Positions 210 through 60,698 are shown, counted from the stretch's first letter. The stretch: 64,000 nt of DNA from Octopus sinensis (GCF_006345805.1 NC_043006.1:42036001-42100000), one strand, 5' to 3'. The notes: generated by a model from the sequence alone, not told the origin. Numbers and translations: made by a program.

Positions 210-726
210 TCTATCTATCTATCCGCTCAGTCGAAGTCGACTCTCGGTTACTCGATGGATCAGTGTCCTCCAGCCAGTTATACCCTGGGTCGCTTCTTTC
301 AGATTGGCTATGTCCATTCCCGTGTCACGCTTGATGGTGTCAAGCCAGCGGGTTCTTGGTCGGCCTCTTCCTCTCTTGCAACTGACCATTCCGAGTATGA
401 TGTCCTTTTCCAGGGATTTTCTCCGCATAATATGACCAAAATATGCTTGGTGATCCTAGCTTCTAGCGACAGTTTCGGCTTGATCTGGTTATGAACTTCT
501 CCATTAGTGAGCCTCGCTGTCCATGGAATCCGTAAAAGTCTTCTCCAACACCAAAGCTCGAATGCATTAATTCTCTTCTGGTCAGCTTTCTTTAGTGTCC
601 AGGTCTCGCATCCATATGTTGCTATTGGGAAGACCATTGCATTCACGACACCAATCTGCATTTGGTAGCGAGTCTGATGTCTCTACTCTTCCAGACCTTG
701 CTCATGCTGACCATTGCTTCTCTACC
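210..726 (-). mobile_element. 5'-truncated RTE/BovB-like LINE 3' end with (GATA)n tail and 10-bp target-site duplication
   Basis: Minus-strand frames give AMVFPIATYGCETWTLKKADQKRINAFELWCWRRLLRIPW and KRGRGRPRTRWLD, typical RTE C-terminal motifs, with frameshifts. TSD AACAAAACTA at 200-209 and 727-736. Confidence 0.92.
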
Positions 727-2659: not shown

Positions 2660-3071
2660 TTTTTTATTCTTTCATTCGTTTCAGTCACTTGACTGCAGCC
2701 AAGCTGCAGCACCGCATTTAGTCGAACAAATCAACGCCATGACCTATCTTTTGTGACCCTAGTACTAATTCTATCGGTCTCTTTTTGCCGAACCACTAAG
2801 TTACGCGGACGTAAACGCACCAGCATCAATTGTCAAGCGATGGTGGGGGGACGAACACAGACACAAACAACAAATACATAAATGCATACATATATATATT
2901 TATAAATGTACGACGGGATTCTTTCAGTTTCCTTCTATCAAATCCACTCACAAGGCTTTGGTCGGCCCGCGGCTATAGCAGAAGACACTTACCCGAGGAG
3001 CCATGCAGTGGGACTGAACCCGGAACCATGTGGTTGGTAAGCAAACTTCTTACCACAGCCACTCCTGCGCC
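2660..3071 (-). mobile_element. SINE family A, full length
   Basis: Reverse complement of the 5497-5908 copy; ends CACAGCCACTCCTGCGCC. Confidence 0.9.
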
Positions 3072-6533: not shown

Positions 6534-7107
6534 GTGGAGGCGCGTGGCTTAGTTGTTAGGCTGTCAGCATCATGATCGTAAGATTGTGGTTTCGATTCCT
6601 GGACCAGGTGACGCGTTGTGTTCTTGAGCAAAACACTTCATTTCACGTTGCTCCAGTCCACTCAGCTGGCCAAAATGAGTAACGCTGCGATAGACTGGTG
6701 TCTCGTCCAGCTGGGGGACACATTTGTTTGTTCCTTCTCGAGCCGTGCCTGGCTCATAAGAGCCGGTTTCCTGGTTTCCTTGGCGTATAGGTTCCCCACC
6801 TGGACGGGATGCCGGTCCGTCGCAGGTGAGCTGCAAGATGCAGCAGGAAAGAGTGAGAGAAAGTTGTGGCGAAAGAGTCAGCAGAAGTTCGCCATTACCT
6901 TCTGCCGGAGCCGCGTGGAGCTTAGGTGTTTCGCTCATAAACACACACATCGCCTGGTCTGGGATTCGAACCCGCGATCCATCGACCGCGAGTCCGCTGC
7001 TCTATCCACTAGGCCATGTGCCTCCACATACGCCATTGAAACCGGGAAACCGGGCCCATGAGCCTAGCAAGGCTTTAAAAGGGCGCATTTATTTTATTTT
7101 TTGTTTT
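6534..7107 (+). mobile_element. SINE (family C head) inserted in the mariner, 14-bp TSD
   Basis: TTACGA(T/C)GACAATG at 6520-6533 and 7108-7121. tRNA-like head TGGCTTAGTTG..GGTTTCGATTCC and a T-rich tail. Confidence 0.85.
6722..7025 (-). mobile_element. SINE family D nested antisense within the preceding SINE
   Basis: Reverse complement of the 25533-25840 copy (GAGGCACATGGCCTAGTG...GGCTCGAGAAGGAACAAAC). Confidence 0.9.
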
Positions 7108-7765
7108 TTACGACGACAATGCACTTTGTCACCGAACCCTCCTCATTAGAGAGCTTCTCATCAAAAACAACATTGCATCACTTCTGCACCTGCACTATTC
7201 GCCAAATTTAGCACCTGCAGACTTCCAGTTCTTCCCTAAGATAAAAATGTAGCTCAAAGGCCGCCGAGATCCAAAACGAATCGTAGAAGGTTCCTGACTC
7301 GCTTACGGAAAACGACTTCCAGGCCGGATTCCAAAAGTGGCAGGAACACTGGTACTGATGTATTGCTGTGCAAGGTGACTATTTCAATGAAGATGATGTT
7401 AAAACTTAGGTAAATAATTTATTTTTTTTATTAAACATAACTAGTCCGAGAACGTTTTGATACCACCACGCATATGACTGCACATAAGTAAAAATATCAA
7501 AAGCCGAGATCATTAAGAAGGGGAAAAATTGTGAAGTATGAAATAACAATGACTGGAGTGAGTTCTAGTCAATGTAGAAATAAAGACATTTTGACTGAAT
7601 AGAGATGTTGATAGCATATATACATATATATATCACTTGGGAAATAGGAGGAGGTAATGTATAGAATAGAATTCGTGTTACTGATTATATGACTGTTTAC
7701 GTTTTTAGTGAAATACAGTGAATAAAAGATTTCAAAGAATAGAAAAATGTATTATATGCGAGTAG

Positions 7766-25532: not shown

Positions 25533-25840
25533 GAGGCACATGGCCTAGTGATTAGAGCAGCTGACTCGCTGTCGAGGAATCGCAGGTTCGAATCTCAGAC
25601 CGGGTGATGAGTGTGTTTATGAGCGAAACACCTAATCTCCACGTGGCTCCTGCAGAAGGTAATGGCGAACTTCTGCTGACTCTTTCGCCACAACTTTCTC
25701 TCACTCTTTCTTCCTGCATCTTGCAGTTCACCTGCGACGGACCCGCGTGCCGTCCAGGTGGGGAACCAATACGCCAAGGAAACCAGGAGACCGGCCCTTA
25801 TGAGCCAGGCGTGGCTCGAGACGGAACAAACAACAACAAC
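25533..25840 (+). mobile_element. SINE family D, full length
   Basis: A-box TGGCCTAGTG, B-box GGTTCGAATC, (AAC)n tail. Confidence 0.9.
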
Positions 25841-25983
25841 ATATAGATAGATAGATAGATAGATACATACATACATACATACATACATACATACATACAT
25901 ACATACATACGTATACATGTGTGTGGGTAGATAAATGTACTCATACTCATGTGTACCTATTTTGCATACACATACACACACAA

Positions 25984-34137: not shown

Positions 34138-34500
34138 CTTACTCTCTTTTACTCGATTTTACTTGTTTCAGTCATTTGACTGCGGATATGCTGTAGCACC
34201 GGCTTTAATCGAGCAACTCGAACCCAGGATTCTTCTTTGTAACCCTATCGGTCTGTTTTGCCGAACCACCGCTAAGATACGGAGATGTAAACACACCACC
34301 ATTGGTGTATGTATATATATATATATATAATATATATATATATATACGACGGGCTTCTTTTCAGTTTCCGTCTACCAAATCCACTCACAAGGCTTTGGTC
34401 GGCCCGAGATTATAGTAGAAGACACTTACCCAAAGTGCCATGCAGTGGGACTGTATCCGGAACCATGTTGTTGGTAAGCAAGCTACTTACCACACAGCCT
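34138..34500 (-). mobile_element. SINE family A
   Basis: Reverse complement of the family A consensus seen elsewhere in the window. Confidence 0.88.
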
Positions 34501-35965: not shown

Positions 35966-36160
35966 CATAATAATAATAACAACATCGAAAAATACCTTAG
36001 GAATGAGAACCTAGGTTCGAAATTTCCCAAGACACCTGATGAAGGCTGGAGGGTATATCAGCCGAAATGTTGTGTTAGCAACAAACAAGATGAGGACAAA
36101 TATCCGTCAAATGTAAATGTAAAAAATGTACATAATTCCTCATCTCTTAAATATAGAACT
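35855..36160 (+). mobile_element. tRNA-headed SINE (family E) with internal (AAT)n and a hammerhead-containing tail
   Basis: A-box TGGCATAGTGG (35862-72), B-box GAGTTCGACTC (35905-15), (AAT)n at about 35929-35982, hammerhead motif at 36032-36075. Confidence 0.75.
36032..36075 (+). ncRNA. Minimal type I hammerhead ribozyme motif (one mutation in helix III)
   Basis: ACAC-CTGATGA-A-GGCTG(gagggtatat)CAGCC-GAAA-TG-TT-GTGT. Helix I is ACAC/GTGT and helix II is 5 bp. The helix III region ATGT is one change from palindromic ACGT. Confidence 0.65.
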
Positions 36161-38680: not shown

Positions 38681-39992
38681 ACACTGCTAAATAAACATAA
38701 TGAGGCACTAAGCACATGCAGCCACCACTTTTTTCACACATTCAAATTCTACAGAAATCTAAATGCCTAAACGACTATACAGTACCTTTCCACAGTACCC
38801 CTTAGGTAATCCCAACAACCTTATAAATCTACATTCTAACTCCTAACCCCAATCTAATTCCTCACTCATACTCGAATATCACAACCATCTAATTATATTC
38901 GTGTGTATGTGCATCCATGCATATGTGTGTATATGTATGAGTGAGTGTATGCGTACATTTATGTATGTGTGTATGTACGTATGTATGCAAGGTATATATA
39001 CCTGCGTGTACAGGGGCAGAGTTGGTATCAACATACTATTGAAAGACCTTTTACGTTGTCACTCGACCTATTGGAAATAGCCAGAGAAAATTCTTAAAAT
39101 TTGCCCTACCCTCTTGTAATAAGGAAAAGACACATTACATTAAGTAGTCCCAAACAAAGCATCAACTGACGAGGTATTCATGGTTGGAATAACTTTCATT
39201 GTACATTTTTCTCGACCGAAGTTGACTGAGGTTTTAACATCATTAATAAAAATAGTATCAATTATATTAGGTGAGATGCTTTACTTGTTATACAACCTTA
39301 TTTCAACCTTGATTAACAGATTTCCTTAAAAGTAGTCATGTCGGGAATATATATTTTATTTTCAAATGTTGTGTACCTCCGTCTATAATTAGCCAATGTG
39401 ACATTTATTCATGACGGTATGGTGTGTTTTGAGGAAGATTCTGCTGATATTTCTAACTGTTCAAGTGACAGCTTAATGGCTCCCTCATTAGCACGTTAGT
39501 CCACACGTATTTTAGGAAGGCGTCTTATATTTTTAGAATGGAATATTTAGCAAAGAGAGAGAGAGAGGGGGGAAGGTGTAGTAAAGAGTGAAGGAGAATC
39601 TGCATGGCGAAAGCTAAAGAAGAGAAAGATGATAACTATATTAGCATAACAGAAATTAAATAAAGCGTAAAATAGATCAGCTAAACGGGCTGAAACACTT
39701 AGTTGACCGTCGACTGAACTGTCTCGATAGTTCAGACAATAACAACAAATAGGGTTGACAGGAAAATGTTTTGATAGTGAATCTGATTTATTAAGTTTGA
39801 AGAGAGCGATAACAGGAGTGATTGGTTCAACGCTTTTAAACCAAATATCGTGTCTTTTATGAGTTCTAAAGCAGTGGTTGTTAAATATTTTATTCTTTGC
39901 ATTCTTCGGAGTAAATATAAATATTTCACTCACCTTTTTGCAGAAAGGTAATATGTGTATTTTAAAAAATGTATTTAGTAATAGCTATCTGG

Positions 39993-40250
39993 TGGAGGCA
40001 CATGGCCTAATGGTTAGAGCAGCGGACTCGCGGGTTCGAATCTCAGACCGGGCGATGTGTGTGTTTATGAGCGAAACACCCAAGCTCCACGCGACTCTGG
40101 CAGAAGATAATGGCGAACTTCTGCTGACTTTTTCGCTACAACTTTCTCTCACTCTTTCCTCCTGTATTTTGCAGCTCATCTGCGACGGACCGGCGTCCCG
40201 TTCAGGTGGGGAACCTATACGCCAAGGAAACCGGGAAACCGGCCTTTTAG
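39993..40250 (+). mobile_element. SINE family D, 3'-truncated
   Basis: Matches the 25533 copy. Confidence 0.88.
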
Positions 40251-40699
40251 AGTATGTGCGGCTGTATTGGGCTGAAGGTATTGCTGTATGACAGTGCTCA
40301 CATAGTTGTGTCGTTAAGAAGCCCGGTTTGTAAATACGTGGTTTGGGGTTCAATCCGACTGCACAGCACCTTGGGAAAGTGTTTTCTGCTATGATGCTGG
40401 GCCGACCAATGCTTTCTCAGTAAATTTCTTTGGTAGAAGCAGTGTGAAAGCACGTCGTATATGTGTGTATAAAGATACGTAAATAAATACTCTTTTACTT
40501 GCTTCAGTCATTTGACTGTGGCCATGCCATGCTGGAGCATCGCATTTAGTCGAGCAAATCGACCCCAGGACTTATTCTTTGCAAGCCTAGTACTTATTCG
40601 ATCGGTCTCTTTTGCCGAACCACTAAGTTACGGGGACGTAAACACACCAGCATCGGTTGTCAAGCGATGTTGGGGGGACAAAAACAGACACACAAACAT

Positions 40700-40749
<50 letters not shown>

Positions 40750-40779
40750 GCGAGAAAGAAGCAACAAGAATGGATAGGT

Positions 40780-40870
40780 TTTTAGTACGATCGTTTCATA
40801 CAAGGACAGGTTTTATTAAAAGTTGCAAAGATTACAGCATATAAACGAGTCCCGTACTCATCAGCTAAAA
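40780..40870 (-). ncRNA. Identical hammerhead motif on the minus strand in the left arm
   Basis: Exact reverse complement of 41290-41380. Confidence 0.8.
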
Positions 40871-41289
40871 TACATGTAAGTTCTCTAGACATCCTAGTGT
40901 TTGAGGCTATACTCATGAAGTAATGTAGATATTTAAAGTTCATTAAAGTTCTTTAAAGATGATGTACAGTCTTATCACAGAATTTTAAAAAAGTTTTGAT
41001 AGCATCACAGAGAAGGTGACCTAATCCATATGAATTTCCATAGATATGATGAGGGATTATATACTCACAGAAGACTTCTGTGAGTATATAATCCCTCATC
41101 ATATCTATGGAAATTCATATGGATTAGGTCACCTTCTCTGTGATGCTATCAAAACTTTTTTAAAATTCTGTGATAAGACTGTACATCATCTTTAAAGAAC
41201 TTTAATGAACTTTAGAAATCTGTTTAATTATCTACATTACTTCATGAGTATAGCCTCAAACACTAGGATGTCTAGAGAACTTACATGTA

Positions 41290-41380
41290 TTTTAGCTGAT
41301 GAGTACGGGACTCGTTTATATGCTGTAATCTTTGCAACTTTTAATAAAACCTGTCCTTGTATGAAACGATCGTACTAAAA
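41290..41380 (+). ncRNA. Type I hammerhead ribozyme motif in the right palindrome arm
   Basis: TTTTAG-CTGATGA-GTACGGGAC...GTCCTTGTAT-GAAA-CGATCG-TA-CTAAAA. Full core, 6-bp helix I, ~9-bp helix II, palindromic ACGATCGT helix III, predicted GUA cleavage after 41374. Confidence 0.8.
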
Positions 41381-41724
41381 ACCTATCCATTCTTGTTGCT
41401 TCTTTCTCGCTTATAATCACCCCACATTACTGTATTGTTAAATCAGTATAGTTTTTTTTGGTGCATCTAAGTTAGGTACCATATTCAAGTAAATTCTTTT
41501 AAATTAACTTGAATCTTTATTGCTCTTTTTTTATATATATATATATATATATACACACACATATACAACGGGCTTCTCTCAGTTTCCGTCCATTAAATCC
41601 ACTCACAAGGCTTTGGTCGGCCCGAGGCTATAGTAGAAGACACTTTCCCAAAGTGCCACGCAGTGTGACTGCAGAAAGATTCATACATAAATAGTAAGAC
41701 GTGTGTGCATTTATGTGTGTGAGT

Positions 41725-43502: not shown

Positions 43503-43939
43503 TATATGGTAACTTTTACCTGTTTTAGTCATTGGACTGCAGCCATGCAAGGGCACCAGCTTGAAGAATTTTTAGTCGAATAAATCGACCCCTGTAATAA
43601 CTTCTTTTAAAACCTGGTGCTTGTTCTATCGGTCTGTTTTGCTGAACCGCTAGATGAAGTGGACGTAAACACCAACACCGGTTATCAAATTGTCAAACGG
43701 TGGTTGGGGAACAAACAGAGGCGCAAAGATACACACACACACACACACATATATAGTTGAAATTTACAGAAAAACAAAAGACGAAGACAGGTGTATAAAC
43801 AACAAGCAGGTGTATTAGTTTGACCTTTGGGAAGGTGAGAAAATCTTTTACATTTCGATCCTATGCTCTTCAACAGAAAGGAACACGAAGAAATAAACAG
43901 AGAGAGAATAAAAAAAAATTTTGGAGTTACATATATATA

Positions 43940-43981
<42 letters not shown>

Positions 43982-44128
43982 ATATGGTGAGCTTCTTTCA
44001 GTTTCCGTCTGTCAAATCTACTCACAAGGCTTTGGTTGGCCCGAGGTTATAGTAGAGGTCACTCTCCCAAGATGCCACGCAATGAGACTGGGCTCAGAAC
44101 CATGAGGTTCTTACCACACAGCCACGCT
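43503..44128 (-). mobile_element. SINE family A with a ~180-bp insertion (about 43750-43930) in its microsatellite
   Basis: Tail at 43503-43745 and head at 43985-44128. The inserted piece carries a degenerate hammerhead-like motif. Confidence 0.72.
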
Positions 44129-54699: not shown

Positions 54700-55030
54700 G
54701 GATCGTGGCACTCCGTCGGTTACGACGACAAGGGTTCCAGTTGATCTGATCAACGGAATATCCTGCTCGTGAAATCAACGTGCAAGTGGCTGAGCTCTCC
54801 ACAGACACGTGTACCCTTAACGTAGTTCTCGGGGAGATTCAACGTGACACAGAGTGTGACAAGGCTAGCCCTTTGAAATACATGTACAACAGAAACAGGA
54901 AGAGTGGGAGAAAGTTGTGGTGAAAGAATACAACAGGGTTCGCCACCATCCCCTTCCGGAGCACTCACAATGTCCGGTCTTGGAATCGAAACCGCGTCCG
55001 CTGCTCTAACTACTGGGACATTGCACCTCC
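54700..55030 (-). mobile_element. Chimeric D-head/C-tail SINE (same junction as 21764)
   Basis: Reverse complement aligns along its length with 21764-22140. Confidence 0.82.
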
Positions 55031-55898
55031 ACAGTTTCTGTGTAGTCGTTACAGATAAGAGTAATGCATTACATAATTCAATAAACATAGTCTTAGTTTC
55101 ACGGTGTAAAATAAATAAAGTGGCTACACAACAGTTTTTATCACTCCCAGAGGAAGTAAAAAGTGGGATTGAAACTGGTTAGTTTCTAGTCTTCTAAAAC
55201 TTCATCAGTGAAAGAATATCCAAAATGATGACCTTTAATCTACAGAGATATTACTACTCAGCTGCACTGATGTTTCTAGTTATCATATGGGGAAAAAAAG
55301 CGTTTGCCTAATCAATATTTATCATTAATACGAAGAGATGTAGTTAGTGAGAAAAATGTTCAGTTTTGAAAAAGATGTGTAATTGGCATAAAATACTACC
55401 CACCATAAAATATAAGATAGAAAATTATAAGAAATGAAACTTTTCAGTTTTTACTTTTCTGAATGACATTTCAAAACTGTATCTTACATTGATCGTAATT
55501 AAGCAGCCAATTCATGTTTTTCGTATTCATCCTGCTTAAAACCGTGACATGTACTTGCTATATTGCGTCCAACATTGAAATAGTTTGGCTTTAAATAAAC
55601 CTTCCTAAATCTTCCCATATTTCGCTTGAGTGTTTTGTCGATAGATGGCGCCAAAGAGCTTTCATAGAAAATTACACTTATTTGTATTTTTTTCTGCTTT
55701 CATAAAATGACGACTTGCAAAATTTTGCTGATAGACATGTGTCTTGAAGGAATTTGGTTTTCCATTGGAACCTAACGGAGCGTTTTTTTTCTTTTTGTTG
55801 TTTATAAATTGCGTTATGTATCATAGAGTATGTATCAACTGGTAACCTACCAGTGTGCCAGCATCGTGATGGAGTTTCGACTATATATATATATATAT

Positions 55899-60164: not shown

Positions 60165-60495
60165 ATTTCAGGGTGTTTGGGTGTCAATCTGAGGACATGA
60201 ACCAAGAGCGATAAAAATCAAACAACCAGTCAACATCATGGTGTTTGGAGTGATCACTAGTGATGGCAACGTTATGCCTTCATTCATCTCAACACTGAGA
60301 CCTACATCATGTGCCTGGAGGAGGGAGTGTTGCCCTGGGTCAAGAGGGTGGCTGCTGGAAGACCCTATGTCAGGCAACAGGATTCTGCACCATGCCATAC
60401 CAGCAGGAGAATCCAGTCATGGCTGTCAGACAATTTCTGCGACCACGTCACCCCTAGCAACTGGCCACCTAACTCCCTATACTGCAACCCCCTCA
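60165..60495 (+). mobile_element. maT (DD37D-like) Tc1/mariner transposase fragment
   Basis: IMVFGVITSDG.VMP and VLPWVKRVAAGRPYVRQQDSAPCHTSRRIQSWLSDNF..WPPNS..CNPL. Confidence 0.85.
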
Positions 60496-60698
60496 AATAA
60501 CACCCACATCATCTCATTAGAAGGATTATACTTTATATAATATCTTCTTAAATACACTCTAAGTAGAAGAAAGACAGCTTCGTCACGGTTTGAACTCCTT
60601 TCATTAGTGCATTTACCAATATCACCAACCGACGGCCTTGAATAGGATTCAACAATGATTTTGGTTCACTATCCATTTATTCATGTTCTACAGCTTAC

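What the first reader, a model, noticed from the sequence alone, without database searches (positions are those of the whole stretch)
40750..41531. 661-bp palindrome carrying a complete hammerhead ribozyme on each strand, inserted in a (TA)n tract
Seen: the arms (40750-41073 and 41075-41410) pair perfectly apart from one 12-nt indel. Each arm holds an intact type I hammerhead: CUGAUGA, GAAA, helix I UUUUAG/CUAAAA, long helix II, self-complementary ACGAUCGU helix III and a GUA site. A non-duplicated ~120-bp extension (41411-41531) follows, and the whole insert splits a SINE A at its (TA)n. Known: Penelope-like elements and metazoan retrozymes carry type I hammerheads, often with palindromic helix III that works through dimers, and PLE insertions often have inverted truncated ends. 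Inference: this is a young non-coding ribozyme retroelement made by fold-back cDNA synthesis. Transcription from either side would give the same self-cleaving motif. A read-through transcript would instead fold into a ~325-bp hairpin that sequesters the ribozyme and is a candidate ADAR/Dicer substrate.
Basis: partly seen in the sequence, partly recalled or inferred. Interest (0 to 1): 0.88.

Follow-up and report, generated by a model that had tools for sequence, protein, structure and literature searches.

The report
Inverted hammerhead retroelement insertion in octopus SINE
A young 782-bp piece of a ribozyme-carrying retrotransposon, copied head-to-head as a near-perfect palindrome, sits inside an older repeat in an octopus genome; the layout is typical of Penelope-like elements, so it is a tidy example of a known kind, not a new one.

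Summary
Arms 40750-41073 and 41075-41410 are reverse complements with no substitutions and one complex 12-nt indel. A 121-bp one-sided extension (41411-41531) follows. The 782-bp insert splits a SINE at its (CA)n(TA)n tract, and four intact copies of that SINE lie in the window.

Each arm carries a complete type I hammerhead consensus, with predicted cuts after A41374 (+) and after 40786 (-). A descriptor search finds only these two sites. Motifs this strong never appeared in 300 shuffles or in 106 Mb of random sequence. Rfam does not detect it, probably because helix II encloses a 41-nt loop and pair 10.1-11.1 is G·U.

The window is octopus DNA. The architecture matches published Penelope-like element (PLE) insertions: 5' truncation, an inverted 5'-truncated copy, a tail at one end only, an AT-microsatellite target, and the hammerhead close to the 3' boundary. 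Opposite-strand hammerhead pairs 100-700 bp apart were already reported in 2014.

I read it as a dead-on-arrival, non-coding PLE-type insertion. Here the ribozyme is inherited cargo that a 323-bp hairpin would sequester. I could reach no other copy of the family, so homology, copy number and cleavage remain untested. It is a new member of a known kind, of modest interest.

The parts
40488..40749 (-). Left part of the interrupted host SINE, ending in (CA)n 40678-40714 and (TA)17 40715-40748, plus one odd base, C40749
   Evidence: BLAST to four intact copies in the window; collinear alignment of the joined flanks; TRF
40750..41073 (-). Left arm: inverted copy of the element. It is 5'-truncated at the centre, and its outer end corresponds to 41410 of the right arm.
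   Evidence: no substitutions against the right arm, lacks 12 nt
40780..40870 (-). Hammerhead motif on the minus strand (C3 at 40864, predicted cut after 40786)
   Evidence: descriptor hit; mirror of the plus-strand motif
41074..41074 (.). Single unpaired centre base of the palindrome (A)
   Evidence: read as a possible non-templated base at a template jump (inference)
41075..41410 (+). Right arm: direct copy of the element, 5'-truncated at 41075
41215..41228 (+). Complex 12-nt indel (present in the right arm only) at the end of a degenerate 10-bp tandem repeat
41290..41380 (+). Type I hammerhead motif: helix I 41290-95/41375-80; CUGAUGA 41296-302; helix II 41303-11/41353-62 with a 41-nt loop; GAAA 41363-66; palindromic ACGAUCGU 41366-73; cut predicted after A41374
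   Evidence: not detected by Rfam
41411..41531 (+). One-sided 121-bp 3' extension ('tail'), AT-rich (26% GC), non-coding, ending in T7; begins with TTATAA
   Evidence: unique in the window; small predicted stem-loops
41532..41671 (-). Right part of the interrupted host SINE, starting with (TA)11 41532-41553

Best explanation
This is a recent, dead-on-arrival insertion made by the retrotransposition machinery of a Penelope-like element (PLE) in an octopus genome. The inserted sequence is the non-coding 3'-terminal part of a hammerhead-bearing element. That element is either the pseudo-LTR region of an autonomous PLE or a non-autonomous, retrozyme-like derivative.

Proposed steps (all inferred):
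1. The GIY-YIG endonuclease cut the (TA)n tract of an older SINE.
2. Both target strands primed reverse transcription of the element RNA. One started at the distal site (now 41531). The other started at an internal UUAUAA (41411-41416), which can pair with the TA-repeat primer.
3. Both cDNAs ran to the same 5' end of the template (41075).
4. One cDNA, after adding a single extra base (41074), jumped onto the end of the other.

The result is a head-to-head palindrome with 3' ends facing outward and a 121-bp tail on one side only.

The hammerhead is cargo inherited from the parent element, where it sits just upstream of the 3' boundary, as in known PLEs. At this locus it most likely does nothing. 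Any transcript crossing the insert makes the antisense arm first and then folds into a 323-bp hairpin that buries the ribozyme.

Shown: the anatomy, the motif, the split SINE, the octopus origin.
Inferred: PLE machinery, two-strand priming, the template jump, inactivity.
For: Anatomy:
- Perfect arms with a single centre base, outer ends differing by 121 nt.
- The insert splits a SINE at (CA)n(TA)n; four intact copies serve as empty-site proxies.
- The TA tract is longer than in intact copies, so a target duplication cannot be read.
- The left junction falls where the element has TTATAA.

Hammerhead:
- Full core and three helices; only two hits in the window.
- 0.01 hits per shuffle at minimum thresholds.
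- 0 of 300 shuffles and 0 in 106 Mb at its actual strength.
- The hammerhead fold, at -13.7 kcal/mol, is close to the MFE of -14.3.
- It lies 36 and 157 nt from the two insertion ends.

- High 5' truncation, an adjacent inverted 5'-truncated copy, a tail at one end only, (TA)n bias, hammerheads near the 3' ends (PMC8557442).
- The Anolis PLE protein cleaves and extends both strands, prefers AT-rich DNA, and starts reverse transcription at two internal sites that define the tail. Its hammerhead cut site is about 85-92 nt upstream of those sites, calculated from the positions given in the paper (PMC11167929).
- Paired hammerheads on opposite strands 100-700 bp apart in Schistosoma (PMC4209133).

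Host:
- Window repeats match Octopus vulgaris.
- O. vulgaris has 31 recently active PLE families (PMC13282606).

No coding capacity.
Against: - No second copy of the element was found anywhere: window, metagenomes, viral contigs, prokaryotic genomes, protein libraries, one 20-kb O. vulgaris locus. Family membership, real element boundaries and helix covariation are therefore untested.
- No RT or GIY-YIG ORF was seen among the ORFs I listed or scanned in the window.
- The tail is 121 bp against the published 30-40 bp.
- Rfam hammerhead models do not score it.
- Pair 10.1-11.1 is G·U rather than the highly conserved G-C. [quoted passage not shown]
- In the Anolis PLE the ORF starts inside the hammerhead. 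Here every ATG in and after the motif meets a stop within about 10 codons.
- Naiads, the PLE clade for which (TA)n targeting was read here, lack canonical hammerheads and are old remnants in cephalopods.
Confidence: 0.6

Rival explanations
1. A single 5'-truncated copy (41075-41531) was inserted first. A later DNA-level event, such as replication template switching or fold-back repair at a break, duplicated 336 bp of it in inverted orientation exactly at its 5' junction.
For: Arms with no substitutions would also follow from a very recent DNA duplication or from gene conversion between arms. The indel lies in a slippage-prone 10-bp repeat.
Against: It needs a second event that starts precisely at the element's 5' end and stops at the old left junction without disturbing the SINE flank. 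Inverted 5'-truncated partners are a documented by-product of PLE integration itself. Fold-back repair normally leaves an asymmetric spacer, and here the centre is 1 nt.
Confidence: 0.1
2. The palindrome is an assembly artefact, for example a chimeric fold-back long read or a collapsed haplotype. The true locus holds one copy.
For: PLE tandem/inverted structures are known to cause assembly problems (PMC8557442). Arms with no substitutions are what polishing of a fold-back read could give. Reads are not available here.
Against: A fold-back chimera would continue into the reverse complement of the extension and the right flank. Instead the left arm stops at 40750 and joins the correctly oriented left half of the same SINE. 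The arms differ by a 12-nt indel and in their outer ends.
Confidence: 0.08
3. It is a foldback or MITE-type DNA transposon that integrated at a TA site. The hammerhead-like motif is a coincidence.
For: Long inverted repeats and a TA-rich target are also features of foldback elements and Stowaway-like MITEs. O. vulgaris has many Tc1-mariner and MITE families. Rfam does not call a hammerhead.
Against: The inverted repeats are not at both ends of the insert: the right 121 bp has no partner. There is no clean TA duplication, since the bases next to the arms are C40749 and T41411. The arms contain no subterminal tandem repeats beyond a 2.5-copy 10-mer. A motif this strong was never seen in 300 shuffles or 106 Mb of random sequence, and it sits where PLEs carry theirs.
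Confidence: 0.07
4. It is a monomer of a metazoan non-LTR retrozyme that spreads through circular RNA. The 457-nt right copy would be one circularly permuted unit, and the hammerhead would be needed to process the parent transcripts.
For: Low GC of 31% and a unit length within the published 51-972 bp range. Type I hammerhead with helix III of 2 bp plus a tetraloop, as in invertebrate retrozymes. Dispersed monomers are common, and retrozymes are argued to derive from PLE pseudo-LTRs. This overlaps with the best explanation and differs only in the source RNA.
Against: There is no tandem arrangement here or elsewhere in the window. The copy does not start or end at the predicted cleavage site. 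Canonical retrozyme hammerheads have a 4-bp helix II with loop-loop contacts, not a 60-nt helix II domain.
Confidence: 0.15

Closest known systems
Hammerhead ribozymes in the pseudo-LTRs of Penelope-like elements (Cervera & de la Peña 2014, PMC4209133)
   Same: Type I topology, a long helix II, and a very short palindromic helix III. The motif is embedded in non-coding terminal sequence of a retroelement. Most genomic copies are isolated truncated remnants, and pairs on opposite strands 100-700 bp apart were reported.
   Different: Helix I here is 6 bp, whereas minimal PLE motifs have 4-5 bp. Pair 10.1-11.1 is G·U instead of G-C. The clear unpaired base after A9 is missing. Helix II closes a 41-nt loop, so the CUGAUGA-GAAA spacing is 60 nt. 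I found no hammerhead described for cephalopod PLEs in the papers I could search.
Complex tandem/inverted PLE insertions with a one-sided tail (Craig et al. 2021, PMC8557442; Frangieh et al. 2024, PMC11167929)
   Same: 5' truncation, an inverted 5'-truncated partner directly adjacent, an extension at only one end, an AT-rich or (TA)n target, an unreadable target duplication, and a hammerhead close to the 3' boundary.
   Different: The tail is 121 bp, not 30-40 bp. Both copies are truncated at the identical base, giving a perfect palindrome. There is no pseudo-LTR tandem and no ORF at this locus.
Metazoan non-LTR retrozymes (Cervera & de la Peña 2020, PMC7229834; Li et al. 2026 preprint, 10.64898/2026.07.22.740005)
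   Same: Small, AT-rich, non-coding units with one type I hammerhead. Helix III is 2 bp plus a tetraloop. They probably depend on PLE enzymes, and dispersed monomers exist.
   Different: Retrozymes are defined by head-to-tail tandem repeats and circular RNA. Here the arrangement is head-to-head, and neither tandem copies nor RNA evidence are available.
L1 twin-priming inversions (own knowledge)
   Same: Both target strands prime reverse transcription, producing an inverted 5' segment joined to a direct 3' segment.
   Different: Twin priming inverts a different segment of the same RNA. It does not duplicate the same segment, and it ends in poly(A). Here the two arms are the same sequence.

Membership tests
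Hammerhead ribozyme, type I | Conserved core C3 U4 G5 A6 N7 G8 A9 / G12 A13 A14 / A15.1-U16.1 / H17 | tested here: met
   CUGAUGA 41296-41302, GAAA 41363-41366, U41373, A41374
Hammerhead ribozyme, type I | Three helices in register around the core, with helix I open-ended | tested here: met
   Helix I 6 bp; helix II 4 bp, bulge, 5 bp; helix III 2 bp plus a GAUC loop, or 8 bp as a dimer. Descriptor hits occur only at the two arms. The constrained fold at -13.7 kcal/mol is close to the MFE of -14.3.
Hammerhead ribozyme, type I | G10.1-C11.1 pair at the base of helix II | tested here: not met
   G41303 lies opposite U41362, a G·U wobble. A U·U at this position is reported in one axolotl retrozyme family with weaker activity.
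Hammerhead ribozyme, type I | Score at or above the gathering threshold of an Rfam hammerhead covariance model | tested here: not met
   No hit at gathering on the whole window and no hammerhead hit at E<=10 on 40600-41700. The likely cause is the 41-nt loop in helix II, which is my inference.
Hammerhead ribozyme, type I | Compensatory changes in the helices among homologues | not testable with these tools
   The only two copies are identical, and no other copy could be retrieved.
Hammerhead ribozyme, type I | Site-specific self-cleavage | not testable with these tools
   Needs in vitro transcription or RNA-end mapping.
Penelope-like element (insertion made by PLE machinery) | ORF with a telomerase-like RT and a GIY-YIG endonuclease | tested here: not met
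   No such ORF was seen in or next to the insert, nor among the ORFs I listed or scanned in the window. This is expected for a 5'-truncated or non-autonomous copy, but it means the copy itself is not an autonomous PLE.
Penelope-like element (insertion made by PLE machinery) | 5'-truncated copy with an adjacent inverted 5'-truncated copy | tested here: met
   Head-to-head arms meet at 41074. The feature is as described in PMC8557442.
Penelope-like element (insertion made by PLE machinery) | Extension ('tail') at one end only, reflecting alternative start sites of reverse transcription | tested here: inconclusive
   A one-sided extension is present (41411-41531), but it is 121 bp against the published 30-40 bp.
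Penelope-like element (insertion made by PLE machinery) | Insertion into AT-rich DNA or a (TA)n microsatellite | tested here: met
   The insert is flanked by (TA)17 and (TA)11 inside a SINE microsatellite. Published bias.
Penelope-like element (insertion made by PLE machinery) | Sequence homology to the pseudo-LTR or 3' end of a curated PLE family | not testable with these tools
   Neither Repbase/Dfam nor a searchable eukaryotic DNA collection is available. Only 20 kb of O. vulgaris could be fetched.
Metazoan non-LTR retrozyme | Head-to-tail tandem repeats of a unit with one type I hammerhead | tested here: not met
   No tandem copy in the window. The arrangement is inverted.
Metazoan non-LTR retrozyme | Expression as self-processed linear and circular RNA | not testable with these tools
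   No RNA data available.
Foldback / MITE DNA transposon | Terminal inverted repeats at both ends of the insert, flanked by a fixed target duplication | tested here: not met
   The right terminal 121 bp has no inverted partner. The bases flanking the arms differ (C40749 versus T41411).

The most novel reading that the evidence does not exclude
The motif may represent an undescribed structural subclass of natural hammerhead. In this subclass a roughly 60-nt helix II domain replaces the usual loop 2, and the base pair is G·U. It would belong to a cephalopod family of non-autonomous PLE-dependent elements that current covariance models miss. The same reading would suggest that some of the 'half-core' motifs noted in (TA)n-targeting PLEs, where CUGANGA and GAAA lie 35-50 nt apart, are real long-helix-II ribozymes. 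Perfect head-to-head copies would then be a recurrent source of long dsRNA in an animal with very heavy A-to-I editing.
Probability: 0.12. Interest if true: 0.55.

Novelty: new member of a known kind. Interest (0 to 1): 0.3.

Why it matters
If the reading is right, the locus is a clean natural record of how PLE integration builds inverted copies. It shows two different outer start points, a shared inner end and a single junction base. These features can be compared with the two-strand priming seen in vitro for the Anolis element.

It also shows that hammerhead-bearing PLE-type elements were recently active in an octopus, and that at least one variant escapes Rfam. Ribozyme counts in cephalopod genomes may therefore be underestimates.

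It does not open a new question. The element class, the ribozyme association, the inverted arrangement and the microsatellite target are all already described.

Tried and rejected
1. Rfam at gathering threshold on the whole window, and at E<=10 on the region, gave no hammerhead. It gave only spurious miRNA-hairpin hits to the palindrome centre and the TA tract.
2. Unconstrained folding of 41280-41405 does not predict the hammerhead fold and is not unusually stable, with z = -1.0. The constrained fold is within 0.6 kcal/mol of the MFE.
3. Searches for more copies all failed:
   - blastn and nhmmer in the window found only the two arms.
   - The core-box pattern in metagenome contigs gave 8 hits. 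All lack helices I and II, so they are chance matches, about the number expected.
   - Viral contigs gave 0. Prokaryotic genome contigs gave 0.
   - The element's 57-aa ORF, used as a handle in the protein libraries, gave nothing or only multi-stretch low-identity matches to long repetitive proteins.
4. I tried to harvest octopus DNA through repeat-encoded proteins. An RTE-like RT fragment led to short or unrelated contigs without the window's SINEs. A SINE-associated ORF led to one 20-kb O. vulgaris locus with all three SINE families but no copy of the element.
5. A Pfam scan of ten window ORFs, including the element's two ORFs, gave no family above cut-off.
6. Supplementary files of the two key PLE papers are not held as text.
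7. The MITE/foldback, assembly-artefact and post-insertion duplication readings were considered and ranked low. See the rival explanations.

Full report
**Observation**

The region was read directly and analysed for repeats. The two arms, 40750-41073 and 41075-41410, are reverse complements. A global alignment shows no substitutions. The only differences are 12 extra nucleotides in the right arm (41215-41225 and 41228) and a single unpaired centre base, 41074. The indel sits at the end of a degenerate 10-bp tandem repeat, so slippage is a sufficient cause.

The 121 bp that follow (41411-41531) have no partner on the left. They are unique in the window.

The whole 782-bp block interrupts a SINE. 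The left flank (from about 40488) and the right flank (to about 41671) each match the same four intact copies in the window, at 18102-17746, 5899-5554, 2665-3016 and 34150-34453. The joined flanks align collinearly with those copies across their internal (CA)n(TA)n tract. The TA tract is (TA)17 on the left and (TA)11 on the right. That is longer than in the intact copies, so a target-site duplication can be neither read nor excluded.

**The hammerhead**

- helix I UUUUAG/CUAAAA (41290-95 / 41375-80)
- CUGAUGA (41296-302)
- helix II GUACGGGAC/GUCCUUGUAU (4 bp, one bulged U, 5 bp) closing a 41-nt loop
- GAAA (41363-66)
- the self-complementary ACGAUCGU (41366-73)
- A17 at 41374

The mirror copy on the minus strand has C3 at 40864 and the predicted cut after 40786.

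Rfam does not recognise it, either at gathering threshold on the window or at E<=10 on 1.1 kb. Unconstrained folding does not pick the hammerhead fold. The hammerhead-constrained structure is, however, only 0.6 kcal/mol above the minimum.

I therefore wrote a descriptor of the kind the field uses for these motifs. It requires CUGANGA, helix II of at least 4 bp, GAAA, a palindromic helix III, a cleavage base H (not G) and helix I of at least 5 bp.
- It finds exactly the two arms in the 64 kb, against 0.01 hits per dinucleotide shuffle.
- With a broader descriptor, motifs as strong as this one (helix I >=6, II >=7, III >=4) never occurred in 300 shuffles.
- They also never occurred in 106 Mb of first-order Markov sequence, where weaker motifs occurred at 9-85 per Gb.
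- The 21 fixed core bases alone occur by chance. Eight metagenome contigs carry them, and none has helices I or II.

So the motif is more than chance would give. Its status as a ribozyme still rests on consensus, not on covariation or cleavage.

Two departures from the canon should be stated. Pair 10.1-11.1 is G·U, not G-C. Helix II is a 60-nt domain rather than a short hairpin.

Helix III (A-U, C-G, GAUC loop) is the form described for invertebrate type I hammerheads that cleave well as monomers (PMC7229834).

**Host**

A repeat-derived ORF of the window hits one named protein, 'Hypothetical predicted protein [Octopus vulgaris]'. The 20-kb O. vulgaris locus around it carries all three SINE families of the window. 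The window is therefore octopus DNA. I could not tell whether it is O. vulgaris itself or a close relative.

**What it is**

The anatomy matches point for point what has been published for PLE insertions.
- Craig et al. describe high 5' truncation, an inverted 5'-truncated copy immediately adjacent that forms inverted repeats, a 30-40-bp tail at one end only, a strong bias for microsatellites including (TA)n, and hammerheads near the 3' ends of canonical PLEs (PMC8557442).
- Frangieh et al. showed that a purified Anolis PLE protein cleaves and extends both strands of an AT-rich target. It starts reverse transcription at two internal sites whose spacing is the tail. From the positions they give, its hammerhead cut site lies about 85-92 nt upstream of those sites (PMC11167929).
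- Cervera and de la Peña reported that most genomic PLE hammerheads are isolated remnants. They also reported that pairs occur 100-700 bp apart on opposite strands (PMC4209133).

Here the two motifs are about 500 bp apart on opposite strands. The cut sites lie 36 and 157 nt from the two outer ends. O. vulgaris has 31 recently active PLE families (PMC13282606), so a source of enzyme is plausible.

The insert has no coding capacity. No RT or GIY-YIG ORF was seen among the window ORFs I listed or scanned. The copy is therefore a truncated or non-autonomous one.

**How the palindrome formed (inference)**

A self-primed hairpin should leave an asymmetric loop of several bases, yet the palindrome is perfect to one base. 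The two outer ends also differ. I think the following sequence fits better.
1. Both nicked target strands primed reverse transcription.
2. One started at the distal site (41531). The other started at the internal UUAUAA (41411-41416), which can pair with a TA-repeat 3' end. The left junction falls exactly there, with one mismatched base, C40749.
3. Both cDNAs reached the same template 5' end at 41075.
4. One added a single base and jumped end-to-end onto the other.

End-to-end template jumping is established for related reverse transcriptases such as R2. That statement is from my own knowledge and was not tested here.

The arms could also have become identical by gene conversion, so no substitutions is only weak evidence of youth.

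**What it does**

At this locus, probably nothing. Transcription from either side makes the antisense arm first and the sense hammerhead second. The predicted product is a 323-bp hairpin of about -586 kcal/mol that sequesters the ribozyme.

**Limits**

I could not reach any other copy of the family. Homology to a curated PLE, copy number, true element boundaries, helix covariation and cleavage are all open. These tests are decisive and are listed as next steps.

**Verdict**

The feature is a new member of a known kind: a hammerhead-bearing PLE-type insertion in its known inverted form. Its mildly unusual traits are a long helix II, a G·U base pair, a 121-bp tail and an exact palindrome. Interest is modest.

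Noticed in passing
window 36031-36077 (+): A second, unrelated hammerhead-like motif: GACAC-CUGAUGA-A-GGCUGG(AGGGUAUA)UCAGCC-GAAA-UGU-U|GUGUU. It has the hallmarks of PLE minimal hammerheads: an extra base after A9, a G10.1-C11.1 pair, a 6-bp helix II, a 5-bp helix I and almost no helix III. Motifs this strong occur at 0.003 per shuffled window and about 9 per Gb of random sequence, so chance is not excluded genome-wide. It lies between a (TAA)n tract and a truncated SINE, in a segment with no other copy in the window. It may be antisense to an element ending in a (TTA)n tail.
   Followed up: partly
window approx. 43705-43940: Another copy of the same SINE (43505-44105) also carries an insertion of about 230 bp in its (CA)n(TA)n tract. 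It is unrelated in sequence to the hammerhead element and A-rich at its right end. The microsatellite of this SINE therefore seems to be a repeated landing site.
   Followed up: no
window 6573-7146, 25533-25843, 39863-40416, 54753-55179: A repeat family with long open frames on both strands occurs at least four times in the window. One frame matches an annotated 'hypothetical predicted protein' of Octopus vulgaris, which looks like a repeat mis-annotated as a gene.
   Followed up: partly
window 311-682 (-) and 60193-60537 (+): By eye these are decayed coding remnants of other transposons: an RTE-like LINE RT C-terminal fragment with thousands of homologues, and what looks to me like a mariner-like transposase fragment. 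Neither reaches any Pfam family.
   Followed up: partly
window 41000-41148: Rfam miRNA models (mir-3688, mir-136, mir-556) match the palindrome centre with E-values down to 5e-11, though below their gathering scores. This shows how a perfect hairpin produces false miRNA-precursor calls.
   Followed up: yes
window 41390-41416 versus 41516-41537: The two outer ends of the element are each preceded by a similar pyrimidine-rich stretch (TTGCTTCTTTCTCGC / TTGCTCTTTTTTT) followed by TATA-like sequence. This might mark two related start sites for reverse transcription, or it might be coincidence.
   Followed up: no
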